Shown one piece after another: positions 1 to 21,207 of a stretch of DNA of 64,000 bases. The stretch lies in IMG/VR virus record IMGVR_UViG_3300030041_000009, positions 124,001-188,000 of that record. One strand, written 5' to 3'. Each line of letters begins with the position of its first letter. Positions within the stretch are counted from its first letter, which is position 1. The translations under genes were made by a program, and so were the position numbers. Under the pieces are notes generated by a model. The model searched no databases. It was not told the DNA's origin and saw nothing but the letters and a program-made list of their open reading frames with translations.

Positions 1-137
1 ATTTTTATTATTATTATTTATTTGATGATGATGATAATTTAATATTATTTTGTGGTGAAGAAGATTTATATGAATATTTTTATACTAAACAAGAAGAAAG
101 AAAAAGAAAATTAGATAAAATAGAAAATTATGAATAA
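1..137 (+). CDS. Partial (5'-truncated) member of tandem paralog family, ends FYTKQEERKRKLDKIENYE
   Basis: Manual translation; same C-terminal block as the six downstream ORFs. Confidence 0.7.
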   Translation, partial: FYYYYLFDDDDNLILFCGEEDLYEYFYTKQEERKRKLDKIENYE

Positions 138-396
138 TTTTAATGATGGTGATAAAATATTATGTAAAAAGGATTTAACTTATTATGGTAACCATATTAT
201 AGAAGGTGATTATTATATTTTTCATGATAATATGTTTAGTGGTATTTTTAATGATTTTTACTGCTGTTATATAAGTGAATCTAATAATATATTTTCATAT
301 TATTTAACTGAACATGATTTAGTTGGTCATTTTTTTATGAAAAATGAGATTAGAAAATTAAAATTAGAAAAACTTTATGAAGAAACAGAATATTAA
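130..396 (+). CDS. Tandem paralog family protein (GDKxLCKK ... RKxKLEKL)
   Basis: Shared N- and C-terminal blocks with neighbours. Confidence 0.8.
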   Translation: MNNFNDGDKILCKKDLTYYGNHIIEGDYYIFHDNMFSGIFNDFYCCYISESNNIFSYYLTEHDLVGHFFMKNEIRKLKLEKLYEETEY

Positions 397-628
397 TGTA
401 GGAGATAGATTATTATGTAAAGAGGAGATTGATAAAATATTTATTAAAGATAAATATTATTATGTAGATGATATTAAAAATTTTTCAACTGATTATAGTG
501 AATATTTTTATGATTTAAGATCAGAATTCAATACAATATTACCATTTTTTAGTGAATCATATTTACATCAGTATTTTTATACTAAACAAGAAGAAAGAAA
601 AATCAAATTAGAAAAACTTTATGAATAA
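377..628 (+). CDS. Tandem paralog family protein
   Basis: NVGDRLLCK / FYTKQEERKIKLEKL. Confidence 0.8.
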   Translation: MKKQNINVGDRLLCKEEIDKIFIKDKYYYVDDIKNFSTDYSEYFYDLRSEFNTILPFFSESYLHQYFYTKQEERKIKLEKLYE

Positions 629-887
629 TTTTAATGAAGGTGATAAAATATTATGTAAAAAAGATTTAATAGCTAATTATAGTACACATTTTATAGAATG
701 TAAATATTATATTTATCATAAAATTCTGAATGATTCATTTAAAGGTTTTGCCTGCTGTATATTTAATGAATCTAATGGAATATATCCATATTTTTTAAAT
801 AAAAATGAATTACTAAATCATTTTTATACTAAACAAGAAGAGAGAAAAATTAAATTAGAAAAACTTTATGAAGAATCAGAATCTTAA
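621..887 (+). CDS. Tandem paralog family protein
   Basis: Close paralog of 130..396. Confidence 0.8.
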   Translation: MNNFNEGDKILCKKDLIANYSTHFIECKYYIYHKILNDSFKGFACCIFNESNGIYPYFLNKNELLNHFYTKQEERKIKLEKLYEESES

Positions 888-1140
888 TGTAGGTGATAAG
901 TTATTGTGTAAAAAAAATTTAAATGAATTATATGCAAGTTTTAATAAAAATAAATATTATATTGTTTATGATATTAAATTATTTGACAATAATACTGATT
1001 ATTGTTATTATATAGAATTTGATAAAAAAAAATATTATTCTTTTAGATATAGCGTTAGATTTTTTTATGAACATTTTTATACTAAACAAGAGGAGAGAAA
1101 AATAAAATTAGAAAAACTTTATGAAGAAACAGGATATTAA
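868..1140 (+). CDS. Tandem paralog family protein
   Basis: NVGDKLLCKK / FYTKQEERKIKLEKL. Confidence 0.8.
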   Translation: MKNQNLNVGDKLLCKKNLNELYASFNKNKYYIVYDIKLFDNNTDYCYYIEFDKKKYYSFRYSVRFFYEHFYTKQEERKIKLEKLYEETGY

Positions 1141-1387
1141 TGATGAAGATAAATTATTATGTAAAAAAAATCTTCTAGTTGGAGCAAATAAATATTTATA
1201 TGTTGATAATTATTATATTGTTATGGTAGTATACGGTCCTTATGAATATTGTTATTATTTTAATGATGAAAATGATAGAATATTACCATTTTCATTTAGC
1301 ATAAAAGAGATGTCTGAACATTTTTATACTAAACAAGAAGAAAGAAAAATTAAATTAGAAAAAATTTATGAAGAATCAGAATCTTAA
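1121..1387 (+). CDS. Tandem paralog family protein
   Basis: Same conserved termini. Confidence 0.8.
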   Translation: MKKQDINDEDKLLCKKNLLVGANKYLYVDNYYIVMVVYGPYEYCYYFNDENDRILPFSFSIKEMSEHFYTKQEERKIKLEKIYEESES

Positions 1388-1631
1388 TGTAGGAGATAAG
1401 TTATTATGTAAAAAAGATTTAACAACATCATATTCAATATATCATAAAGATAGATATTATATTGTTCATTTTATTATTAATTATGATGATGATTATCAGT
1501 ATTTGATATCTGATGATAAAAATGCTTATTCATCTTTTAAACGTGATGAAGAATATTTATATACTTATTTTTATAGAAAAAATGAGATTAGAAAAATTAA
1601 ATTGAAAAAATTGAATAATATTTTTAATTAA
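1368..1631 (+). CDS. Tandem paralog family protein
   Basis: Same conserved termini. Confidence 0.8.
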   Translation: MKNQNLNVGDKLLCKKDLTTSYSIYHKDRYYIVHFIINYDDDYQYLISDDKNAYSSFKRDEEYLYTYFYRKNEIRKIKLKKLNNIFN

Positions 1632-1696: not shown

Positions 1697-2770
1697 ATGA
1701 AAAAAGTAAAGAACATTTTATTTAAAATGGAATTAGAAGGTAATGGTGTTGTTAACTGTGATAGTAATGGACAAAAATGGATATGGAATGAAATTAGTGG
1801 TGGAAAGTATGAAACTGATAATAATTTAATATTTGCAAAAAAAAATATATATCAGAAAAGTAATGGTGAATATGATTATAAAATAAAAATTTCTAGTAAT
1901 TGTTTAAGACATAATATTTTTATTGATGATATTCCATTTCAATCTCCAAATATATTGCATAATAATTATTTACTTGTGTCAATGTTGGCTTCTCCTGCAA
2001 TTATAAATAGAGGTCATTTATTTGCATTGAATGAAGATGAGATTGATAAAACAATTAGAAGAAAAAGTGTTTTATGTATAATTGACGCTGAACAAACAAA
2101 TAATTGTAAATCAAAAATAGAACTTATGACAGTTAGTGGTGAAAAAATAAGTGATACTTCATTATTTAACAAAGAAACTGTAGGAGATATAACATATGAG
2201 ACTGATGGTAATATTGATTTAATGCAAATGCAATTTATTAGTTGTTCTAAAAATTTAGATCGATTAGCATTCAATCCAGATTTATTTCCTTTATATTCAG
2301 AATTATTGAAAAAAAGATTACCATCATTTAATTCGGAATTAAAATATTATAGGATTACAAATAGTGTTGTTGAATTACCAGAATATGGTTTTTTATTATC
2401 CAATACAGATGTTGTTGAACTAACAAAAAATCTATTATATAAAATGCTAAAAATGAATATTTATAAATCTGGATCTAGTGTTGTTACGTCTAAACTTAAA
2501 ATTAAATTAGTATATGACGTATTTAATGATAAAAAAAATAATTCTGATGGATGGATTGAATTAACAAAAGATGTTATAGATAATTTAAATTTTGAAAATG
2601 AAAATTTTTATACTGAATATGATTTTGAAAATGCAAAAACTTTAGATATAGAATTGTCAGATAAGAGATCTATTATAATTAAAAAAAGAATAGATGCTAA
2701 ATTGAAAGCTAAAGATGATAAAAAAGAAAAAAAAGAAGCTAAATTAAAATCTCAAAAAGAAGCTAAATAA
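1697..2770 (+). CDS. cas7: Cas7 backbone protein, type I-F2 (Cas7fv)-like
   Basis: Motifs GNGVVN, ISSNCLRHNIF, LAS-x4-RG, TSLFNKETVGD, QMQFISxxKxxDRxA, ExGxLL match the recalled Shewanella Cas7fv pattern; next to cas6 and array. Confidence 0.85.
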   Translation: MKKVKNILFKMELEGNGVVNCDSNGQKWIWNEISGGKYETDNNLIFAKKNIYQKSNGEYDYKIKISSNCLRHNIFIDDIPFQSPNILHNNYLLVSMLASPAIINRGHLFALNEDEIDKTIRRKSVLCIIDAEQTNNCKSKIELMTVSGEKISDTSLFNKETVGDITYETDGNIDLMQMQFISCSKNLDRLAFNPDLFPLYSELLKKRLPSFNSELKYYRITNSVVELPEYGFLLSNTDVVELTKNLLYKMLKMNIYKSGSSVVTSKLKIKLVYDVFNDKKNNSDGWIELTKDVIDNLNFENENFYTEYDFENAKTLDIELSDKRSIIIKKRIDAKLKAKDDKKEKKEAKLKSQKEAK

Positions 2771-2780
2771 TTCTAATAAT

Positions 2781-3680
2781 ATGGAATATTTTTTAAAATT
2801 GTCATTTAAAGATGCTGGATTTTTTGAAAAAGCAACTAATAATCAAAAACCTAGTATAAGTGTTCATCAAATAAGTAACATGCTGCATGTTTTAATGGGT
2901 GAACGTCCAAGTCCAACATATAGAGATACATTAATTAAACCTATATCAGATATATTTAATATAGCTAATTTAGCTTATATAAAAATAGATACAACAAGAT
3001 TTTTAAATAAATCTAGTGGTAAAATGTGTTATATGAATGAGTTTATACAAACAAATAAATTTGCTTATGATAGCTATAGAGATAAAAAAAGAAGTTTTAT
3101 TTATTGGGAAAATCTAGAATGTTATTTAACTACTGATCTATTTATAGAAATGATTAATTTATTTAATAATATATTAGGTTATGATGTTAAATCAAAACCT
3201 GCAATGTATATAATAAAAGAGATTATTACATATTATAGTAGTTCTAAATTAGTTATAGATATTAATAATGAAATAAAAAATAATAGCAAAATAAAATTTG
3301 CAAATTTCATTAAACAATATAATGATAATTCTGATTTTACAATTTTTTGTAAAAAATTAGTTAAAAATAATAAAACTCCAATTGCAAATCTTCTTATTGG
3401 TATTGTAAATCAATCAGCAATAACAATTGGTCAAAATCCAAAAACTACATTAACAAATATTAGAGGAATTGATAATATTACAAAAATTAGTGGTTCTATA
3501 ATAATTCCTTTAACATCAGAATATGTTGACAAAATTAAAAATTCAAAAGGTTGTGCAACGTTATTAGATGGAGGATTTGTTTGGATAGAAGATTTGATAA
3601 ATGAAGATGAAATGATTGAAAATGATTTAGATAGTTATATTAATATTAATAAATTAGAAGAATATGAGAATAAAAATTGA
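2781..3680 (+). CDS. cas5: Cas5, type I-F2 (Cas5fv)-like
   Basis: Between cas7 and cas6; MLHVLMGER and TKISGSIII..LLDGGFVWI resemble Cas5fv N- and C-terminal RRM elements; ~300 aa with central helical insert. Confidence 0.7.
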   Translation: MEYFLKLSFKDAGFFEKATNNQKPSISVHQISNMLHVLMGERPSPTYRDTLIKPISDIFNIANLAYIKIDTTRFLNKSSGKMCYMNEFIQTNKFAYDSYRDKKRSFIYWENLECYLTTDLFIEMINLFNNILGYDVKSKPAMYIIKEIITYYSSSKLVIDINNEIKNNSKIKFANFIKQYNDNSDFTIFCKKLVKNNKTPIANLLIGIVNQSAITIGQNPKTTLTNIRGIDNITKISGSIIIPLTSEYVDKIKNSKGCATLLDGGFVWIEDLINEDEMIENDLDSYININKLEEYENKN

Positions 3681-4368
3681 ATTTACAGAAAATAAAACAT
3701 TGGTACCGATTAAGAATCAATCATATATTAATTATTATATACACAAATGTCTTGGAGTTAATAATAAATATCATGATTCTAAAAATGATTACTCTATATC
3801 ATCTTTATATGGTGGAAACCTAACTGAAGATAAGTTACATTTATCATTTAAGAATGGAGGAATTATTGTAGTAACTTCAAAAAATGAAGAATTTTTGAAT
3901 GATTTAATAAGTGGAGTGATGTCTAATCAAGATTTAAATTGGGGAATGAAATTTAATAAAATTAATTTTATCTTTGAAAAATTTATAAATGGATGGAATC
4001 ATTTCGCAACATTATCTCCATTTATTATTAGAAAGCATATTAATAAAAAGAAATATACTTATTCAACTTTAAATGATTCTGATTTCGTATATATTGTAAA
4101 AAACCATATTATAAAAAAATTGAGTAAAATTTATAACGGTATTAATTTAAAAGATTTTGATGTTAAAATAATAAATCATCCTTCACATAAAGTAAAGAAA
4201 ATAATGGTTAAAAATGTCAAAAATGAAGCTAATCAATGTCACATTAGTATATTTTGTTCATCTGATGTGGCAGAAAAAATTTATAATTTAGGTATAGGAC
4301 AATCAACTGGTTCTGGATTTGGTACAATTTATAAAACAGAAAATAAAGATAAATATAAATTAGTATGA
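3664..4368 (+). CDS. cas6: CRISPR-associated endoribonuclease Cas6 (canonical, non-Cas6f)
   Basis: C-terminal Gly-rich loop GIGQSTGSGFG, YSISSL and TLSPFII motifs; abuts array leader. Confidence 0.92.
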   Translation: MRIKIEFTENKTLVPIKNQSYINYYIHKCLGVNNKYHDSKNDYSISSLYGGNLTEDKLHLSFKNGGIIVVTSKNEEFLNDLISGVMSNQDLNWGMKFNKINFIFEKFINGWNHFATLSPFIIRKHINKKKYTYSTLNDSDFVYIVKNHIIKKLSKIYNGINLKDFDVKIINHPSHKVKKIMVKNVKNEANQCHISIFCSSDVAEKIYNLGIGQSTGSGFGTIYKTENKDKYKLV

Positions 4369-4469
4369 TAAAAATGAATAAATATAATGATATACGTATA
4401 TTAATAACTCATTTTTATTTATTAATATATACTATAAATAACTCAATATCAATTAATTATAAATATCCT
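4369..4469 (+). promoter_or_regulatory. AT-rich CRISPR leader
   Basis: Between cas6 and the first perfect repeat; repeat variants accumulate at the far end; contains TAATATATAC (4423-4432), like other putative phage promoters. Confidence 0.7.
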
Positions 4470-6930
4470 GATATTATTTATATAAATCCGTAAGGGAGTC
4501 TCAACCAATGAATTGATGTCTATCCTGTTCTGCTAGATATTATTTATATAAATCCGTAAGGGAGTCTCAACTCTAGCTGTTCAATCTCTTTAAATAGATT
4601 TGATATTATTTATATAAATCCGTAAGGGAGTCTCAACATAGTGCAATTACTTATTCTAACATAACAGGATATTATTTATATAAATCCGTAAGGGAGTCTC
4701 AACAAATAAAATGATTGACTTTCAATTATATCAGATATTATTTATATAAATCCGTAAGGGAGTCTCAACATATGTTATATATATGTATTTAATTTGTCGA
4801 TATTATTTATATAAATCCGTAAGGGAGTCTCAACGAGCGTCAGTCAATGTTGAATTCGCTTTTGATATTATTTATATAAATCCGTAAGGGAGTCTCAACA
4901 CATATTGCTTATTTACATTAAATACGCTAGATATTATTTATATAAATCCGTAAGGGAGTCTCAACTATAGTCAATTAAGAAAAGAGTTAATCGGTGATAT
5001 TATTTATATAAATCCGTAAGGGAGTCTCAACACATATTGCTTATTAGAATCAAATACGCTAGATATTATTTATATAAATCCGTAAGGGAGTCTCAACATA
5101 TTTCTACAAATCATTCAAAGAAGAAATGATATTATTTATATAAATCCGTAAGGGAGTCTCAACAAGTGTAGCCAGAAAAAATGGGAAAAGTGCGATATTA
5201 TTTATATAAATCCGTAAGGGAGTCTCAACGAACCCTATTAATGACATTTTTAGTGCAATGATATTATTTATATAAATCCGTAAGGGAGTCTCAACAAAGC
5301 AGAGCAGGAAAAGAAGTGATTATATGATATTATTTATATAAATCCGTAAGGGAGTCTCAACAGTTGATGAAAAAAATAGGGAGGTTATAGGATATTATTT
5401 ATATAAATCCGTAAGGGAGTCTCAACAATGAATTAAAGGCAACCGAAGTTCTTGATGATATTATTTATATAAATCCGTAAGGGAGTCTCAACGAATTACT
5501 ACGTAAAACAAAAAGTGATTCAGATATTATTTATATAAATCCGTAAGGGAGTCTCAACTTATCATATTTAATAAATATAGTAATATAAGATATTATTTAT
5601 ATAAATCCGTAAGGGAGTCTCAACAAAGGAAGTGATATTATTTCAAATACAAAAGATATTATTTATATAAATCCGTAAGGGAGTCTCAACGAAGGTGGTG
5701 CCAGCACATCTATTAATAAGATATTATTTATATAAATCCGTAAGGGAGTCTTAACAAGGTATCAATTCTTTTTCTTAATTGGTAAGATATTATTTATATA
5801 AATCCGTAAGGGAGTCTCAACCCTGATTTTCTTGTAAAGATTTTCAAATAAGATATTATTTATATAAATCCGTAAGGGAGTCTCAACGGTGATTATACAG
5901 ATTTAGAATTAGAATTAGATATTATTTATATAAATCCGTAAGGGAGTCTCAACAGAGAAACAGTTTTAGTTTTAGGTACAACAGATATTATTTATATAAA
6001 TCCGTAAGGGAGTCTCAACATTGATTGATATTCAGTTATAAAATAATTTGATATTATTTATATAAATCCGTAAGGGAGTCTCAACGGTGTAACTCCAATT
6101 TTCACAGATGATTTTGATATTATTTATATAAATCCGTAAGGGAATCTCAACTTCTTACCAGTTGAATATTCAGAGTATTTAGATATTATTTATATAAATC
6201 CGTAAGGGAATCTCAACTATAGAAAAGGAGGGAAGACACTTGTTAAAGATATTATTTATATAAATCCGTAATGGAGTCTCAACAATGAATTACAACGGTG
6301 AATTCTGTATGCAGATATTATTTATATAAATCCGTAAAGGAGTCTTAACAGTTTATGATTTGCAGCATATTCAGATAATGATATTATTTATATAAATCCG
6401 TAAGGGAGTCTCAACAAATCAAATGATCATTTAGATGACAGTTTAGATATTATTTATATAAATCCGTAATGGAGTCTCAACATATATAGAAGAAAAACAA
6501 ATGACAAATATTGATATTATTTATATAAATCTGTAAGGGAGTCTCAACAATAAATCTCTTTCTATTGTTTCTATAGTTGATATTATTTATATAAATCCGT
6601 AAGGGAGTCTCAACTAAAGAAGAAAAAATAATTCTGAATGATAAGATATTATTTATATAAATCCGTAAGGGAATCTCAACTTCTCTTTCTATTTTTGAAA
6701 AAAATGATAAGATATTATTTATATAAATCCGTAAGGGAGTCTCAACATGATTTAGAATTTATTACATTAAGTGAAGATATTATTTATATAAATCCGTAAG
6801 GGAGTCTCAACGACGAACAAGGTCGCACAGAAGTCGAATTCGATATTATTTATATAAATCCGTAAGGGAATCTCAACAAAATAGTGACACTATTTAAATA
6901 TGTGTTTATTATATTTATATAAATCAGTAA
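4470..6930 (+). CRISPR. CRISPR array: 37 full-length 36-bp repeats (GATATTATTTATATAAATCCGTAAGGGAGTCTCAAC) plus a degenerate terminal repeat at ~6907-6930; 37 spacers of 29-31 nt
   Basis: Counted directly; ~66-bp period; point variants only from repeat 20 onward. Confidence 0.99.
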
Positions 6931-6996
6931 TTAAATTTATGATTTATATTATAAATAATTAAAAAATTATTTTTATTCACAATTAAAATAAAAAAT

Positions 6997-9294
6997 ATGA
7001 AATTAGAAGAAATTGTATCAAATAGTAGTGGAATATCATTAATAACTCATTCAAAAGCAGTTAAAAAAATAGGAATGATGTTATCAAAAAAGTTATCATT
7101 AAATGAAGACCTTGAAAAACAAATTTCAATAGCTTGTTTATTGCATGATTTAGGTAAATGTAATTTAGATTTTCAAAATTATATAAAATCAAAAAGTAAA
7201 ACAATTTCTTTTATTAATTCTCCAATATTTCATCATGAAATAAGTTGGGCATTTGTGTCATGTATTTTAAATAATGATGAATATAGATATTCTTTAGATT
7301 CAATATATTGGCATCATTCTAAACCAAAAATAAATTATATAAGTAATGATAATATATCATTAATTTTAAGTGATATGTGTGATGATGATAAAAAAAATAT
7401 TTTATCAATGTATAATTTTTTAATGAATGAAAATATATTATTTGAAGATATAAATTTTGAAAAATCTATCAATACTCCATTATATTATTTAAATGAACCA
7501 AATAGTTTAACAAATTCTAAAAATTCATTAGTAAGATCTTGTGTTATAACTGCTGATAGACTTGTATCAGCATCAGATCAAGAAAAAATATTGTATGATG
7601 ATGATTATTGTGAAGAATTAATAAACAATTTATCATATAAAGATACTAAAGTATATAGCAAACCTATTAATTATGATTCTATTCGTTTTGATTCTCAAGT
7701 TGATTACGCAAATCAATCATTAAATAATCGAACTACAATAATGAAAGCCCCAGCCGGTTTTGGTAAAACATTATTGGGGTTATTATGGTCATTAAAATCT
7801 AATAAAAAATTAATATGGGTATGCCCTAGAAATATTATTGCTGAAAATGTATATAATTCTGTTTTACAAGAATTAAAAAATATATCAGTTGAATTATCAG
7901 TTGAGTTATATTTAACAGGTAATAGACAGAAAACAAATAATGAAAACACTAAAGAATTTACATCTGATATTATAATAACTAATATAGATAATTATTTATC
8001 TCCTAATGTGAATAATTCTATTAGAAATAGATTATTTGTTATTAATTATTGTGATGTGATTTTTGATGAATATCATGAATTAATTAAAGATGATGCACTA
8101 TTTGCATGTTTTATTAATATCATGAAATCTAGACATATGTTAACAAATAGTCACACATTATTATTAAGTGCTACACAAACTATAATGGAATATTTATGGG
8201 ATGGAACAAATATAGATAAAAAAACTAAAATTTTACCAAATAAAAATTCTCATTATACATCTGCACATAATGGTAAATATTTGATTAATTATATTGATGA
8301 TATTGATACAATAACTAATGAAAAAGATTCAGTTGTTATTATGAATTCTATTTCAAATTCTCAAAGATTATATTGTTATAAAAAAGGCGATATTTTAATA
8401 CATAGTAGATATATAGATTCTGATAAAGAAAAAATAATGAATAAAATTATTCATTTATATGGCAAAGAAAATAAAAATATTTTGAATAAAGATAGTATTA
8501 TATCAGCACCTATTTTACAAGCATCTATGGATATATCATTTTTAAATTTAACAGATAGTGTGATGTCTCCAGAAACTACTTTACAAAGAATAGGTCGATG
8601 TGATAGGTGGGGACATTTTTATTATAAAAAAAATAAAACTCCAAAAATAAATTTATTTTTTAATGAAAATAAAAGTGAATTTAGAAACTCAGAAAACACT
8701 AGTATATCAAATCAATATGATTTAGAATTAAATAAATTATGGATTTCATTTATTAAAAAACATATTATTAACGGAAATTTATATTCAATAAATGAATTAT
8801 ATGAATATTATAATATGTTTAATAATGAAAATAATGAAAATTTAAAAAAGTTTATCACATCTAAACTAAAAACAAGTTTATTAAATTTATGTAAAATTGA
8901 ACCGTATAAGATGATGGAGAAATCTAAAAACAATACAATTAAAAATAATAATACTAAATTAAGAAGTGGAGGAGATATATATTGTATATATAAATATGCA
9001 AAAAAAAGACAAATGACGGACTCATTTAGTGTAGATTTTAATCGAGATATTAAAAAATCTGAACCAATAACAGGTTTAGATAGTAAAATTAAGAGAATAA
9101 TAAAGAATATTATAAAAATTAAGGATGATAGATTTTTTTATAATAAATATTCGTTATTTAAAAATAATCAATATACTTTACCTATACTTAAAGATTATGC
9201 CAGGAAAAAAGAAACCCCATATATTGCATTTGATAAAGTTTATTGTGAAAAATTAGGATTAGTAAAAAATGATATTTACGATAATTTAATATAA
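6997..9294 (+). CDS. cas3: Cas3 HD nuclease-helicase (no N-terminal Cas2 fusion)
   Basis: HD motifs HS, LLHDLGK, HHE, WHH, AD; SF2 motifs APAGFGKT, DEYH, SAT, HSR, QRIGRCDR; follows array. Confidence 0.95.
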   Translation: MKLEEIVSNSSGISLITHSKAVKKIGMMLSKKLSLNEDLEKQISIACLLHDLGKCNLDFQNYIKSKSKTISFINSPIFHHEISWAFVSCILNNDEYRYSLDSIYWHHSKPKINYISNDNISLILSDMCDDDKKNILSMYNFLMNENILFEDINFEKSINTPLYYLNEPNSLTNSKNSLVRSCVITADRLVSASDQEKILYDDDYCEELINNLSYKDTKVYSKPINYDSIRFDSQVDYANQSLNNRTTIMKAPAGFGKTLLGLLWSLKSNKKLIWVCPRNIIAENVYNSVLQELKNISVELSVELYLTGNRQKTNNENTKEFTSDIIITNIDNYLSPNVNNSIRNRLFVINYCDVIFDEYHELIKDDALFACFINIMKSRHMLTNSHTLLLSATQTIMEYLWDGTNIDKKTKILPNKNSHYTSAHNGKYLINYIDDIDTITNEKDSVVIMNSISNSQRLYCYKKGDILIHSRYIDSDKEKIMNKIIHLYGKENKNILNKDSIISAPILQASMDISFLNLTDSVMSPETTLQRIGRCDRWGHFYYKKNKTPKINLFFNENKSEFRNSENTSISNQYDLELNKLWISFIKKHIINGNLYSINELYEYYNMFNNENNENLKKFITSKLKTSLLNLCKIEPYKMMEKSKNNTIKNNNTKLRSGGDIYCIYKYAKKRQMTDSFSVDFNRDIKKSEPITGLDSKIKRIIKNIIKIKDDRFFYNKYSLFKNNQYTLPILKDYARKKETPYIAFDKVYCEKLGLVKNDIYDNLI

Positions 9295-9386: not shown

Positions 9387-11339
9387 ATGGTAAATAATAA
9401 CATTATTAGTGTTAAAGCTAAAAGAAATTTAATTAATGGTCAACTTACTAAAAATAATAAACCATACGTAAGAAAATTTGATTTTAGTCGTTATAGCAAT
9501 GATCAATTAGTTGATGCTTTATATAGTAAGAAATGGAATACTAATCGAAAAAAAGCACTTATTGCAATTAATAAATTAATAGATATTAGAATTAAAAATG
9601 ATAAATGTACTAAATATGATATTGAAAATCTAAAAGATATTGTATATAATAAAAAACACCAATTAATAAAATCTGCTAATAGTAATAGTAAAACAACTAC
9701 CACCACCACAACTATTCCAGCAAATACTAATTTAGCTCATAGTATAAAATTTCGTATTAATAAATTGATTTCTGAAATATATCGTCTAACTGGCATCAAA
9801 TTAGAAAAATTAAATAGAACTGATAATATTAATGATAAATCACACGTATTTGATGATCAGATTTTTGCATCATTAAGTTGCATATATAATATGTTATCAT
9901 CAAAACTTAATTCAAAACATAGTAGGTATAATATGTTAACTGCAGAAACTCAAGCAGGTAAAACTGGTGTTGTACGTAATATAATATATTTATTAGAAAC
10001 TTATCAAGAATTAAGAGAATATCTAAATTTGAAATTTAGAAGTAGTGTATTAATAACTCCAATGTGTGATAATTCAAATAAAGAACAATTAAAAACTGAC
10101 ATATCTCATGGAGAGTGTCGGCAAGATGATCAAAAAATATTAAAGAGGAATGGTATTATGCATAATCCAGATTTAATTCGTTGGTCAAGAAAAAATAAAG
10201 TAGGTGATTTAAATAATTGTATTATATTTATTGATGAAGCTCATTTAGCATCAAATGTTGATAGTGCTATGAATAGTTATCTTCAAAAAAATGGTATAAA
10301 TTTAAATGGTTCAACTGATTTATCAAAAAAAAATATTTTCTTATTTTCTATATCAGCAACTCCGTATGAAGAACATGTTGGTAATATTTTATATAAAAGA
10401 AAGAACACTATTGAATTATCTCACGGACCTAATTACAAAGGCTTAGAATATTTTTTAAAAAATAATTTTTTAAGAGAATCATTTGATTTATCAACAACAG
10501 AAGGTGAAAAACATTTTATAAATGAAGCAGAAAGCTTTAATAATAAAATAGGATATTATATTGTTAGAATAAATAAAAATACAAATACAAATAATCTAAT
10601 ACCTGATGGATTTAAAACTTTGACATATTATGAGAAAGATAAAGAAGTTATTAATGATGTATTAAAAAATGCACCAGATGCTCCTACCATAATATTTATT
10701 AAGGAGAAAATGAAGCAATCATATCAATTAGAGAAAGAAAATATTGTAATGTTATTTGATAGAACTACAGTTAATGATTCTACATATAGAACAAGTTTTA
10801 TTGTTCAAAGTTTTGCAGGTAGATCATGTGGATATCATAATTATAATTTTATAATTTATACAGAAATAAAACACATCAAACTTCATCTTTCATATTTAAA
10901 AAATAAATATAATGTTCCTCCATGTAAACATGTAATTAAGAAAAATAAATTTAATTTTAAAAATGGTATAAAAGAACAAGCTTCATCATATAGTGATCAA
11001 AATGATTCATCACATACAAATGATTTTTCATTAAAAATTGTACATAATACACCGAATGAAGGTTATATAGAATTAAATAATAATATCATAACAATATATT
11101 TAGATAAAGATAAAAATTTAGTATTATCTAAAAAATCAAAAGTAGAAACAAATTTTCTTGCATCATATATTGAAGATTATGTTGTTATTTCTGATATTAA
11201 AACTCCTTGTGCAAATTTAATTGATGTAAAAAATGCATTAACATATTACTGTCAACTTATATCATCAAAAATAACAATAAATGATATTAAAACTAAAAAT
11301 GGTAAAAAATTTATTGATTTATTAGAATTTGAATTTTAA
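9387..11339 (+). CDS. SF2 helicase-like ATPase
   Basis: TQAGKT (Walker A), IDEAH (Walker B), SATP, QSFAGRSCGY (motif VI). Confidence 0.75.
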   Translation: MVNNNIISVKAKRNLINGQLTKNNKPYVRKFDFSRYSNDQLVDALYSKKWNTNRKKALIAINKLIDIRIKNDKCTKYDIENLKDIVYNKKHQLIKSANSNSKTTTTTTTIPANTNLAHSIKFRINKLISEIYRLTGIKLEKLNRTDNINDKSHVFDDQIFASLSCIYNMLSSKLNSKHSRYNMLTAETQAGKTGVVRNIIYLLETYQELREYLNLKFRSSVLITPMCDNSNKEQLKTDISHGECRQDDQKILKRNGIMHNPDLIRWSRKNKVGDLNNCIIFIDEAHLASNVDSAMNSYLQKNGINLNGSTDLSKKNIFLFSISATPYEEHVGNILYKRKNTIELSHGPNYKGLEYFLKNNFLRESFDLSTTEGEKHFINEAESFNNKIGYYIVRINKNTNTNNLIPDGFKTLTYYEKDKEVINDVLKNAPDAPTIIFIKEKMKQSYQLEKENIVMLFDRTTVNDSTYRTSFIVQSFAGRSCGYHNYNFIIYTEIKHIKLHLSYLKNKYNVPPCKHVIKKNKFNFKNGIKEQASSYSDQNDSSHTNDFSLKIVHNTPNEGYIELNNNIITIYLDKDKNLVLSKKSKVETNFLASYIEDYVVISDIKTPCANLIDVKNALTYYCQLISSKITINDIKTKNGKKFIDLLEFEF

Positions 11340-16346: not shown

Positions 16347-17681
16347 ATGACACAAATAATCAAATTAAACAACCAACCTGATGACTTAATAAGTCAATTA
16401 AAAGATAAAGAATTATTAATATATGAAGATATTCAAGGATCTCAAGTATTTGTACAATGGGACGGAAATAAATTCTCAATAAGACCAAAATCAATTAATA
16501 ATACAGATCTAAATTTTGTAGATTTAGCTATACAAAAATATTATAATTTCGTATTTCAATATTTTTACACATTACCGGATTTTGTAACTAATTTATTATC
16601 AAAAACTTGGTGGTTTTGTTTTGAATATTTTCCAGATAATCAGCCAGGTAATATTGAATATAAGAAAATTCCGAAGAATAATTTAATATTAACGTGTATA
16701 GTTAAAGGTACAAAATATAAATATAATTACAATGAGATATTAGAATATGCTAAATTATTCAACGTAGATGCATTACCAGTGATATTTAAAGGTAAATTGA
16801 ATGATAAGCAGTTAGAGGTAATTAACTTGTTCTTACATACATCAAAAGAAGATTTAGATTATGTATATGGAGAATCTAATTTTGCATATTTTTTTTATAA
16901 GATATTAAATCCTCAATTAAACAATTCATTTTTAATGGATAGTTTCAATGATAATTTAGAAAAGATAATAGTTAGAATAAACGGAGATGATGAATTTTCA
17001 TTTGAGATATTAAATCCGTCGTATGAAAAAATGAATCTTGATAGTAGAACAGATTATTTAGAGAATTATTCGTTAATATTATTAAATTTCTTAGAATTTT
17101 TACAACTTATTAGTTTTGATAAAATAAAACTAAAAGAGATTACAAAAGAAGAATTATATATTGAATTAATTTCAGCAATATTTAATGATTATGTTGAGAA
17201 TATTACTAAAGAAATAAAAGATTGGAATTTATCAATACCTACATTTTTTTCAGAGGATAAATTTAAAATCAATACATTTTTATTGAAGAATGATAAAACA
17301 ATTGATTATATAAAATCTGATGATAAAATTGAGTATATTTTTAAACTTATATTGAGTTCATTTAATAAAAAATTAAAGAAGCCTATTGGCATTTTTAACG
17401 AAAAAACTTTAGAAATGTTTAATAGAGAAGTAGATAAAATTTCTATTTATTTGGATAATATGCTGAAAGTGAATCGTGAATATTTATTGAGAAATAATGA
17501 TTTATTGAATTTTAAAGATTATTTTAATGTTAATTTTAATACTGATTCAGAAAAAAATATTTATCCTGACGTAAAAAAATTAGGAGCAGAAATACCTTCA
17601 GGTGGAGAAAAAAAGAAAGAAAATCCTAAAGAAGAATTAAAAGGAGGTAAACCTTTTGATATAAAAAAAGGTAAATTTTAA
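16347..17681 (+). CDS. RNA ligase (Rnl2-like) fold protein, apparently catalytically degenerate
   Basis: YEDIQGS (motif I, K->D), FCFEY, LPVIFKG, LEKIIVR, FEILNP. Confidence 0.55.
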   Translation: MTQIIKLNNQPDDLISQLKDKELLIYEDIQGSQVFVQWDGNKFSIRPKSINNTDLNFVDLAIQKYYNFVFQYFYTLPDFVTNLLSKTWWFCFEYFPDNQPGNIEYKKIPKNNLILTCIVKGTKYKYNYNEILEYAKLFNVDALPVIFKGKLNDKQLEVINLFLHTSKEDLDYVYGESNFAYFFYKILNPQLNNSFLMDSFNDNLEKIIVRINGDDEFSFEILNPSYEKMNLDSRTDYLENYSLILLNFLEFLQLISFDKIKLKEITKEELYIELISAIFNDYVENITKEIKDWNLSIPTFFSEDKFKINTFLLKNDKTIDYIKSDDKIEYIFKLILSSFNKKLKKPIGIFNEKTLEMFNREVDKISIYLDNMLKVNREYLLRNNDLLNFKDYFNVNFNTDSEKNIYPDVKKLGAEIPSGGEKKKENPKEELKGGKPFDIKKGKF

Positions 17682-21043: not shown

Positions 21044-21129
21044 TGCCTTGTGATGGAATTGGCTAAACATTTCAGTCTTTGAAACTGATGCTCATTGTGA
21101 GCTTGTGGGTTCGAACCCCACCAAGGCGA
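21044..21129 (+). tRNA. tRNA with TTG (Gln) anticodon on a class II long-variable-arm body
   Basis: Acceptor TGCCTTG/CAAGGCG, anticodon arm TCAGT-CTTTGAA-ACTGA, variable stem GCTCA/TGAGC, T-arm GTGGG-TTCGAAC-CCCAC; CCA not encoded. Confidence 0.85.
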
Positions 21130-21135
21130 CAATAT

Positions 21136-21206
21136 TCTTTCTTGATGTAATGATAGCATATCATTTTCTGACAATGAATGACTAAGTTCAAATCTTAGAG
21201 AAAGAA
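21136..21206 (+). tRNA. tRNA-Gln(CTG), AT-rich
   Basis: Acceptor TCTTTCT/AGAAAGA, anticodon arm TCATT-TTCTGAC-AATGA, T-arm CTAAG-TTCAAAT-CTTAG; D-loop has GA instead of GG. Confidence 0.75.
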
Positions 21207-21207
21207 C

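What the first reader, a model, noticed from the sequence alone, without database searches (positions are those of the whole stretch)
1697..9294. Phage-encoded chimeric minimal type I CRISPR-Cas: I-F2-like Cas7/Cas5, canonical Cas6, Cas2-free Cas3 and a 36/30 array
Seen: only four genes (357, 299, 234 and 765 aa) flank a 37-spacer array, with no large-subunit gene among them and no cas1/cas2/cas4 in the window. Knowledge: type I-F2 (I-Fv) is the type I variant in which Cas5fv/Cas7fv replace Cas8, but it uses Cas6f, 28-nt repeats, 32-nt spacers and a Cas2-Cas3 fusion. Here the Cas7 motifs match Cas7fv as I recall it, yet Cas6 has the canonical GxGxxxxxGFG form, repeats are 36 nt, spacers are ~30 nt, and Cas3 starts directly with its HD domain with catalytic motifs intact. 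Cas7 also carries a Lys-rich C-terminal extension. Inference: an unusual, very compact, interference-competent Cascade variant carried by a Bacteroidota jumbo phage.
Basis: partly seen in the sequence, partly recalled or inferred. Interest (0 to 1): 0.92.

Follow-up and report, generated by a model that had tools for sequence, protein, structure and literature searches.

The report
Phage-borne Cas8-less type I CRISPR-Cas
A huge, very AT-rich phage carries a complete-looking four-gene DNA-targeting CRISPR system with a 37-spacer array; it is related to the minimal type I-F2 system but fails most of that subtype's defining features, and it is one member of a large, mostly phage-borne family that I did not find described in the papers I could search.

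Summary
cas7 (1697-2770), a 299-aa gene (2781-3680), cas6 (3664-4368), a 36-nt-repeat/30-nt-spacer array (4470-6942) and cas3 (6997-9294) lie on one strand.

- **Cas7:** it is a Cas7fv relative by sequence profile and by predicted fold.
- **Cas3:** it is closest to the I-F2 Cas2-3 fusion, lacks the ~105-aa Cas2 part, and keeps the HD and helicase motifs.
- **Cas6:** it is an ordinary Cas6/Cas6b type, not Cas6f.
- **299-aa protein:** it sits where cas5fv sits and its model has an RRM-like core, a helical insertion and a beta-hairpin. No sequence or fold search links it to Cas5fv or any named family, so "I-F2-like Cas5" is unproven.
- **Other cas genes:** none was found among 45 further window ORFs of 140 aa or more.

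The locus is not a one-off. The same four-gene module recurs in at least 40 IMG/VR contigs of up to 597 kb, and the 299-aa family has 557 clusters at 50% identity. In midpoint-rooted trees built without an outgroup or support values, the phage Cas7 and Cas3 sequences group apart from the three canonical I-F2 sequences, and Cas6 and repeat types differ between phage branches.

No target of any tested spacer was found. I read it as a new, mostly phage-borne variant of the Cas8-less type I design. It is probably interference-competent and has no adaptation genes in the part of the window that I scanned.

The parts
1697..2770 (+). cas7: backbone subunit, Cas7fv-like, with a ~50-aa Lys-rich C-terminal helix that extends well beyond the core aligned with canonical Cas7fv
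   Evidence: NCBIfam cas_Cas7fv gives E 2e-19, but 70 bits against a cut-off of 200. PADLOC Cas7fv gives 4e-13. The family profile matches PDB 5o6u Cas7fv at E 4e-27. hhalign against plasmid Cas7fv gives 99.6% probability, E 1e-24 and 28% identity. The AF2 model (pLDDT 83) finds 5o6u/9g44 Cas7 at E 4e-17 by Foldseek, against about 1e-7 for other Cas7s. The precomputed Pfam assignment is PF28157 Cas7fv-like.
2781..3680 (+). Candidate Cas5-equivalent subunit, inferred to cap the 5' handle and read the PAM; belongs to an orphan family
   Evidence: It always lies between cas7 and cas6 in 20+ distinct loci, as cas5fv does in I-F2. The AF2 model (pLDDT 81, pTM 0.61) shows an RRM-like core, an all-helical insertion at 109-217 and a beta-hairpin at 224-244. 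It has no significant sequence or fold match. The family has 557 clusters at 50% identity.
3664..4368 (+). cas6: pre-crRNA endoribonuclease of the generic Cas6/Cas6b type
   Evidence: TIGR01877 cas_cas6 scores 79 bits, above its cut-off of 58.65. PADLOC Cas6b gives 6.5e-36. Pfam Cas_Cas6_C gives 4.8e-12. The G-rich loop lies at 210-220. No Cas6f model was hit.
4369..4469 (+). Probable leader of the array
   Evidence: This is inferred from array polarity: repeats are intact next to this stretch, and mutated or degenerate repeats lie at the far end. The promoter scan was uninformative.
4470..6942 (+). CRISPR array: 37 intact 36-nt repeats, 37 spacers of 29-31 nt and a degenerate terminal repeat (6907-6942)
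   Evidence: A 3-bp stem in the repeat is kept across 10 related repeats, with one compensatory pair. The predicted 8-nt 5' handle GUCUCAAC is an inference.
6997..9294 (+). cas3: HD nuclease plus SF2 helicase, without a Cas2 domain
   Evidence: PADLOC Cas3fv gives 6.5e-66 and is the best hit, covering profile positions 320-903 of 951. Pfam hits Cas3_HD, DEAD and Cas3-like_C_2. The only PLSDB tblastn hits are the Cas2-3 proteins of four canonical I-Fv loci. The motifs are intact and the Cas2 part is absent.

Best explanation
This is a phage-encoded type I CRISPR-Cas interference module without a large or small subunit. It is evolutionarily related to subtype I-F2 and belongs to a separate, mostly phage-borne lineage.

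Proposed mechanism:
1. The array is transcribed from the cas6-proximal leader (inferred).
2. Cas6 cuts each repeat at the base of a short hairpin. This leaves an 8-nt 5' handle and a 3' hairpin on a 30-nt guide (inferred by analogy with other Cas6 enzymes).
3. Several Cas7 copies coat the guide. The 299-aa protein caps the 5' handle and uses its helical insertion to read a PAM and open the duplex, as the helical (AH) domain of Cas5fv does (inferred from position and model only).
4. The Lys-rich C-terminal helices of Cas7 may hold the displaced strand in place of Cas11 (speculative).
5. The stand-alone HD-helicase Cas3 is recruited directly by Cas7 and the Cas5-like subunit, and degrades the target DNA (inferred from intact motifs and from the I-F2 structure).

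No adaptation genes were found in the scanned part of the window, so spacers would be acquired rarely or in trans. The likely targets are competing mobile elements or host defence loci. None was identified.
For: - Cas7 is homologous to Cas7fv by HMM, profile-profile comparison and predicted structure.
- Cas3 is nearest to I-F2 Cas2-3, and its HD, Walker A and DExH motifs are intact.
- Cas6 passes the TIGR01877 cut-off.
- The gene order cas3-cas7-X-cas6-array in most relatives equals the I-F2 order cas2/3-cas7fv-cas5fv-cas6f.
- No fifth conserved gene flanks the module.
- The module is conserved down to about 25-30% identity on contigs of 14 to 597 kb, which argues for selection on function.
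- The cas genes have the phage's own GC content of 21-22%, so they are long-resident.
- The array is regular, and degeneration is confined to one end.
- The I-F2 literature shows that a Cascade made of Cas5, Cas7 and Cas6 can read a PAM and recruit Cas3 without Cas8 or Cas11 (PMC12956352).
Against: - The 299-aa protein has no detectable similarity to Cas5fv or to any Cas5 or Cas8 family. hhalign gives 0.1% probability and the best Foldseek E-value is 0.04.
- No protospacer was found in the window, the related loci or GenBank phages (all spacers), or in IMG/VR (spacer 19, spacer 36 and a pattern covering the spacer 8/10 pair) or JGI metagenomes (spacer 19 only). Targets and PAM are therefore unknown.
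- The arrays are identical in all nine assemblies of this phage, so there is no sign of ongoing acquisition.
- Only 64 kb of a genome of at least 346 kb was inspected for other cas genes.
Confidence: 0.72

Rival explanations
1. It is an ordinary type I-B-like (or other known subtype) system. Its large subunit is either encoded elsewhere in the >=346-kb genome or is the 299-aa protein itself, as a shrunken Cas8.
For: Cas6 is Cas6b-like, and Cas3b models are the second-best Cas3 hits. The 299-aa protein is unclassified. Most of the genome was not inspected.
Against: Cas7 hits only Cas7fv and Cas7f models, and its fold matches I-F2 Cas7 about ten orders of magnitude better than I-B, I-C or I-E Cas7. 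Cas3 is nearest to I-F2 Cas2-3. No extra conserved neighbour exists in 20+ distinct loci. The model of the 299-aa protein has an RRM-like core with a thumb-like hairpin, and the weak fold hits include chains I take to be Cas5, judged only from chain length and entry title.
Confidence: 0.08
2. The locus is a decaying or repurposed remnant. It would bind or silence targets, or merely express RNAs, without degrading DNA.
For: There are no adaptation genes in the scanned part of the window, the arrays are identical across samples, and no targets were found. Many phage CRISPR loci lack some functions (PMC7162821).
Against: All catalytic motifs of Cas3 and the Cas6 G-loop are intact. All four genes are retained across a very diverse family. 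The 37-spacer array is long against a median of six repeats reported for phage arrays (PMC7162821).
Confidence: 0.1
3. The Cas6 and array module is tied to the host's 36-nt-repeat/30-nt-spacer CRISPR loci, the geometry of Bacteroidota type VI-B arrays. The phage array could be filled in trans by host adaptation proteins, or its transcripts could engage host effectors. This is not exclusive of the main explanation.
For: Repeats of 36 nt with 30-nt spacers, and the ends GTTG/ATTG...ATCACAAC in relatives, resemble the PspCas13b direct repeat. In-register identity is 16-20 of 36 in 9 relatives (p <= 0.003 against shuffles). F. columnare VI-B arrays have 36-bp repeats and 30-bp spacers and acquire spacers in trans through II-C Cas1 (PMC8092290).
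Against: The window's own repeat matches only 14 of 36 positions (p 0.05). Only one verified VI-B repeat was available for comparison. No host array was found, and no further scan of bacterial genomes was available.
Confidence: 0.15

Closest known systems
Type I-F2 (I-Fv) CRISPR-Cas of Shewanella putrefaciens and relatives (PDB 5O6U, 5O7H, 9G44)
   Same: There is no Cas8 and no Cas11. Cas7 is homologous (hhalign 99.6%, and the best fold match). The Cas3 helicase-nuclease is the nearest relative. The gene order cas3-cas7-X-cas6 is the same. A mid-sized subunit with a helical insertion sits in the cas5fv position.
   Different: Cas6 is of the Cas6/Cas6b type, not Cas6f. Cas3 lacks the fused Cas2. 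No cas1 was found. The 'Cas5' has no detectable similarity to Cas5fv. Cas7 carries an extra Lys-rich C-terminal helix. The system is mostly phage-borne, and its Cas7 and Cas3 group apart from three canonical I-F2 sequences in midpoint-rooted trees.
Vibrio phage ICP1 type I-F1 system
   Same: It is a phage-encoded type I system with a long array, used (in ICP1) against a host anti-phage island.
   Different: ICP1 keeps Cas8f (Csy1), a Cas2/3 fusion, Cas1 and Cas6f (PMC10161043). None of these is present here.
Type I-C variant of huge phages (Al-Shayeb 2020)
   Same: It is a reduced type I system on huge phages and lacks Cas1 and Cas2.
   Different: That variant lacks Cas6, uses a Cas5d-like protein, and has another helicase in place of Cas3 (PMC7162821).
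Bacteroidota type VI-B (Cas13b) arrays
   Same: They share the 36-nt repeat and 30-nt spacer geometry and similar repeat termini.
   Different: There is no Cas13b here. The repeats here are expected to be cut by Cas6 and used by a DNA-targeting Cascade.

Membership tests
Type I-F2 (I-Fv) | No large (Cas8) and no small (Cas11) subunit gene in the locus | tested here: met
   Only four genes flank the array. No Cas family appeared among the families listed for 45 other ORFs. No conserved fifth gene exists in related loci. The rest of the genome was not seen.
Type I-F2 (I-Fv) | Cas7fv-family backbone protein | tested here: inconclusive
   It is clearly homologous. However, it scores 70 bits against the NCBIfam equivalog cut-off of 200, and it groups outside the three canonical sequences in the tree.
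Type I-F2 (I-Fv) | Cas5fv with the alpha-helical (AH) PAM-reading domain | tested here: inconclusive
   By sequence the feature is not met: hhalign gives 0.1% probability and no NCBIfam or PADLOC hit was found for 22 family members. The model has a helical insertion at residues 109-217, roughly where the AH domain of Cas5fv lies, judging from the PAM-contact residues (113, about 205, 253) named in PMC12956352. Foldseek does not retrieve Cas5fv.
Type I-F2 (I-Fv) | Cas6f (Csy4-type) endoribonuclease | tested here: not met
   It hits only the Cas6, Cas6b and TIGR01877 models.
Type I-F2 (I-Fv) | Cas2-Cas3 fusion, with cas1f alongside | tested here: not met
   Cas3 starts at the HD domain, and the ~105 N-terminal residues of the fusion have no counterpart. 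No Cas1 was found in the window.
   Repeats are 36 nt and spacers 29-31 nt. The PAM cannot be tested because no protospacer was found.
Type I-B | Cas8b large subunit with Cas7b and Cas5b families, plus cas1, cas2 and cas4 | tested here: not met
   No Cas8, Cas7b or Cas5b hit was found. Cas7 hits only the Cas7fv and Cas7f models. No adaptation genes were found in the window. Only Cas6 is I-B-like.
Type I (general) | Cas3 with an HD nuclease and an SF2 helicase, a Cas7-based Cascade, and a CRISPR array | tested here: met

The most novel reading that the evidence does not exclude
The locus represents a subtype-level, mostly phage-borne lineage of type I systems that is sister to I-F2. In this reading the PAM-reading subunit is a new protein family unrelated in sequence to Cas5fv, Cas2 has been shed from Cas3, and Cas6 and repeat modules are swapped between branches (Cas6b type with 36/30 arrays, Cas6e type, and IV-A3-like type with 28-nt repeats). 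At about 1,655 aa in total, it would be a smaller complete Cascade-plus-Cas3 interference set than the canonical plasmid-borne I-F2 loci fetched here (about 1,840 aa). Its 36/30 repeats may let it draw on the adaptation machinery that serves Bacteroidota type VI-B arrays.
Probability: 0.35. Interest if true: 0.8.

Novelty: new variant of a known kind. Interest (0 to 1): 0.62.

Why it matters
It would show that the Cas8-free, Cas11-free Cascade design is not a rarity of a few Gammaproteobacteria. It would instead be a widespread and diverse solution used by huge phages, with hundreds of 50%-identity clusters.

The system is also a very compact four-gene type I interference module of about 5 kb. 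Its PAM-reading subunit belongs to no named family, which is of interest for understanding minimal Cascade mechanics and for tool building. It also raises the question of how phage arrays of this length are filled without the phage's own adaptation genes.

Tried and rejected
**Linking the 299-aa protein to Cas5fv or any other Cas5 or Cas8 (all negative)**
- No Pfam, NCBIfam or PADLOC hit for 22 family members.
- No match in a PDB sequence-profile search.
- hhalign against three plasmid Cas5fv sequences gave 0.1% probability, with both the 22-sequence and the 166-sequence profile.
- Foldseek against the PDB and BFVD gave nothing significant.
- A permissive local hhalign gives a collinear alignment with Cas5-like N-terminal helix and C-terminal G-rich motifs, but it is not significant.

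**Looking for extra system components**
- The 650-aa protein after cas3 is conserved only in one close relative (L014). It is unrelated to the 649-aa protein at the same place in L036, so I rejected it as a system component.
- No conserved gene lies upstream of cas3 in the relatives.

**Protospacer searches (only the phage's own arrays were found)**
- All spacers against the window, against 45+ related loci (178 unique spacers from 19 arrays) and against GenBank phages.
- Spacer 19, spacer 36 and a pattern covering the spacer 8/10 pair against IMG/VR.
- Spacer 19 against JGI metagenomes.

**Other**
- Rfam found no family in the array.
- The sigma-70 promoter scan equals its shuffled controls.
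- tblastn of Cas7 against 50,697 GenBank phage records found no match.
- The Cell 2022 survey of virus-encoded CRISPR-Cas systems could not be read, so prior description there cannot be excluded.


Full report
**1. What is in the sequence**

The window is 21.7% G+C. Five features lie on the + strand:
- a 357-aa ORF at 1697-2770;
- a 299-aa ORF at 2781-3680;
- a 234-aa ORF at 3664-4368;
- a CRISPR array;
- a 765-aa ORF at 6997-9294.

The first three genes are packed like an operon, with a 10-nt gap and then a 17-nt overlap.

The array has 37 intact copies of a 36-nt repeat at 4470-6877 and 36 spacers: 30 of 30 nt, 5 of 29 nt and 1 of 31 nt. One further 29-nt spacer is followed by a degenerate repeat at 6907-6942 that matches 23 of 36 positions. 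The mutated repeats all lie towards cas3. I therefore infer that the leader is the ~100 nt after cas6 and that transcription runs with the cas genes.

Spacers 8 and 10 are variants of one sequence.

**2. What the four proteins are**

*Cas7 (357 aa).*
- It hits NCBIfam cas_Cas7fv at E 2e-19, but with 70 bits against a cut-off of 200. It hits PADLOC Cas7fv at 4e-13, ahead of Cas7f.
- A 20-sequence family profile finds the Cas7fv chains of 5O6U/5O7H and 9G44 at E 4e-27.
- hhalign against a plasmid-borne Cas7fv gives 99.6% probability, E 1e-24 and 28% identity over 256 columns.
- An AlphaFold2 model (pLDDT 83, pTM 0.80) retrieves the I-F2 Cas7 chains at E 4e-17 to 1e-13. Cas7 proteins of I-A, I-C, I-E and I-B follow only at about 1e-7.
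- The database's precomputed Pfam label is PF28157 'Cas7fv-like'.
- The last 47 residues form a predicted helix that is 35% Lys/Arg. The Lys-rich C-terminus is shared by the 20 aligned close relatives (40-53% identity), and it extends well beyond the core that aligns with canonical Cas7fv.

*Cas6 (234 aa).* It passes the TIGR01877 cut-off (79 bits against 58.65). Its best PADLOC model is a Cas6b model (6.5e-36). It carries the G-rich loop GIGQSTGSGFG. No Cas6f model is hit.

*Cas3 (765 aa).*
- It has Cas3_HD, DEAD and Cas3 C-terminal domains.
- Its best model by far is PADLOC Cas3fv (6.5e-66, 221 bits). The next best is a Cas3b model at 128 bits. The match covers only profile positions 320-903 of 951.
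- Among 72,556 plasmids, its only tblastn hits at E <= 1e-8 are the Cas2-3 proteins of four loci annotated cas1f, cas2/3, cas7fv, cas5fv, cas6f in Acinetobacter and Legionella (27-29% identity).
- In an alignment, every phage Cas3 starts at the HD domain, whereas the canonical proteins carry about 105 extra N-terminal residues. The HD residues, Walker A and DExH motifs are conserved.

- Neither it nor 21 relatives hit anything in Pfam, NCBIfam or PADLOC.
- Family profiles find nothing in the PDB.
- hhalign against three canonical Cas5fv sequences gives 0.1% probability, even with a 166-sequence profile.
- The AlphaFold2 model (pLDDT 81, pTM 0.61) shows an N-terminal beta-alpha-beta core, an all-helical insertion at 109-217, a long beta-hairpin at 224-244 and C-terminal strands.
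- This layout is roughly that described for Cas5fv: an RRM palm, a thumb and an inserted alpha-helical domain whose PAM-contact residues are numbered 113, about 205 and 253 (PMC12956352).
- Foldseek, however, finds no significant match (best E 0.04) and does not list Cas5fv. The weak hits do include several chains that I take to be Cas5 subunits of I-B, I-E, I-F1 and IV-A complexes. I judged this from chain lengths and entry titles only.
- I therefore call it a Cas5-equivalent by position and architecture. I do not call it a Cas5fv homologue.

**3. Surroundings and the carrier**

- A PADLOC scan of 45 other window ORFs of 140 aa or more listed no Cas1, Cas4 or Cas8 among the families shown. 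It found methyltransferases and homing endonucleases.
- PHROGs gave an SSB, methyltransferases, homing endonucleases, a NUDIX hydrolase and several phage families of unknown function.
- The identical Cas7 is found on contigs up to 346,561 bp, and on eight IMG/VR contigs of 100-256 kb.
- The 444-aa protein at 16347-17681 is 59% identical to a protein of the 735-kb uncultured phage LR756501. It is 48-50% identical to proteins of the 634-642-kb phages. Al-Shayeb et al. placed these genomes in the Mahaphage clade and predicted that they replicate in Bacteroidetes.
- Two of the three hits in species-representative genomes are contigs of Bacteroidota metagenome-assembled genomes (MAGs).

Together this supports 'huge phage, probably of Bacteroidota'. 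The host assignment is indirect.

**4. It is one member of a large family**

- The Cas7 search returned 161 relatives.
- IMG/VR holds 40 loci, on contigs up to 597 kb.
- The 299-aa family has 557 clusters at 50% identity (E <= 1e-3), of which 337 have E <= 1e-30.
- Cas6 has 293 relatives at E <= 1e-10.
- Only 3 loci were confirmed among 185,579 species-representative genomes. That search depends on short peptide patterns, so it can miss relatives.
- No GenBank phage record has a Cas7 of this family.

In about 20 distinct loci the four genes are always together. The usual order is cas3, cas7, X, cas6, array, which is the I-F2 order. The window and a few relatives have cas3 after the array. No further gene is conserved next to the module.

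Midpoint-rooted FastTree trees of Cas7 and Cas3, without an outgroup and with no support values inspected, separate the three canonical I-F2 sequences from all phage sequences. The two trees are broadly congruent with each other.

Cas6 and the repeat vary between branches:
- Most loci have the Cas6b type, with 36-nt repeats, 30-nt spacers and the conserved 3' end AAGGGAATCACAAC. The window's 3' end is the variant AAGGGAGTCTCAAC.
- L005 and L034 have a 175-aa Cas6e-like protein.
- L042, L043 and L045 have a 184-aa type IV-A3-like Cas6, 28-nt hairpin repeats and 32-34-nt spacers. L042 also has a Cas1e-like Cas1.

Cas7 and Cas3 track I-F2, while the processing and array module is exchangeable.

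The short stem in the 36-nt repeats is kept across 10 loci, with one compensatory pair.

**5. How it most likely works**

What is shown:
- the components;
- intact catalytic motifs;
- conservation across a diverse family;
- cas genes with the GC content of the phage genome.

What is inferred:
- Cas6 processing to an 8-nt 5' handle.
- A Cascade made of Cas6, several Cas7 copies and one Cas5-like cap.
- PAM reading by the helical insertion.
- Direct docking of Cas3 on Cas7 and the Cas5-like subunit, as in the I-F2 cryo-EM structure.
- DNA degradation by the HD domain.

It is speculative that the Lys-rich Cas7 helices guide the non-target strand.

Targets are unknown. I found no match in the window, the related loci, GenBank phages, IMG/VR or JGI metagenomes. 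IMG/VR was searched with only three spacer patterns, and JGI metagenomes with only one. Mean spacer GC is 26%, slightly above the phage's 21.5% (resampling p about 0.001), which suggests other AT-rich DNA as the source.

The arrays are identical in nine assemblies of this phage, which probably come from related samples.

**6. The repeat class**

A 36-nt repeat with 30-nt spacers is the geometry of Bacteroidota type VI-B arrays. In F. columnare those arrays acquire spacers in trans through the type II-C Cas1 (PMC8092290).

The PspCas13b direct repeat, as quoted in a preprint, matches the relatives' repeats in register at 16-20 of 36 positions (p <= 0.003 against shuffles for 9 of 10). It matches the window's own repeat at 14 of 36 positions (p 0.05).

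This is a lead, not a finding. Only one verified VI-B repeat was compared, and no host arrays could be searched.

**7. Comparison with what is known, and novelty**

The closest known system is type I-F2.
- Three shared features were tested and met: Cas8- and Cas11-less locus, Cas7 homology, and Cas3 affinity with the same gene order.
- Four defining features were tested and not met: Cas6f, the Cas2-3 fusion, cas1, and 28/32 repeat-spacer geometry.
- One is inconclusive: Cas5fv.

The locus therefore works like I-F2 but should not be filed as I-F2.

The 2025 classification paper names I-F4 and an I-F1/I-F2 intermediate, but nothing with this composition. The 2020 huge-phage paper describes a different, I-C-derived variant. 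The FLSHclust survey and a 2024 review do not mention it. Searches that combined I-F2 or I-Fv with huge or jumbo phages found nothing.

Two caveats apply. The Cell 2022 virus-CRISPR survey could not be read. The existence of Pfam PF28157 shows that the Cas7 family has at least been noticed.

My verdict is that this is a new variant of a known kind, and that it is well supported as a real and widespread system. I rate its interest moderately high rather than exceptional.

Noticed in passing
window 130-1631 (continues upstream of the window; L001 6034-9935; L014 6258-9596): A tandem array of paralogous ~88-aa genes lies directly upstream of cas7: 6 copies in the window, 15 in the same phage (L001) and 12 in a related phage (L014). 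Each gene overlaps the next by 20 nt. The N- and C-termini are conserved and the middle is variable. None hits Pfam or PHROGs. It might be an anti-defence or regulatory paralogue set.
   Followed up: partly
window 4470-6942 and the arrays of L003, L004, L014, L022, L024, L028, L031, L035 and L040: The 36-nt repeats and 30-nt spacers, with termini GTTG/ATTG...ATCACAAC, resemble Bacteroidota type VI-B (Cas13b) direct repeats. Identity to the PspCas13b repeat is 16-20 of 36 in the relatives. This hints at a captured Cas6 and array module, or at spacer acquisition in trans.
   Followed up: partly
window 4966-4995 and 5098-5127: Spacers 8 and 10 share their first 14 and last 10 bases and differ only in the middle, as if two variants of one target had been sampled.
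   Followed up: partly
window 16347-17681: This 444-aa protein is 59% identical to a protein of the 735-kb uncultured phage LR756501 and 48-50% identical to proteins of the 634-642-kb phages. That links this phage to the largest known phage genomes. Those phages have no homologue of this Cas7.
   Followed up: partly
window 21044-21207: Two adjacent tRNA-Gln genes, with anticodons UUG and CUG.
   Followed up: no
window 14000-64000: Several ORFs match DNA methyltransferase or homing endonuclease families (HNH and GIY-YIG types), which is typical of large phage genomes.
   Followed up: no
L042 12668-13483; L005 11993-12514; L034 12008-12532; L043 11956-12507: Distant members of the same Cas7/Cas3 family carry other processing and adaptation parts: a Cas1e-like Cas1 (L042), Cas6e-like proteins (L005, L034), and a type IV-A3-like Cas6 with 28-nt repeats (L042, L043, L045).
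   Followed up: partly
window 9387-11339: A 650-aa protein after cas3 has no family hit. It is conserved (70% identity) only in the close relative L014 and is not part of the conserved module.
   Followed up: yes
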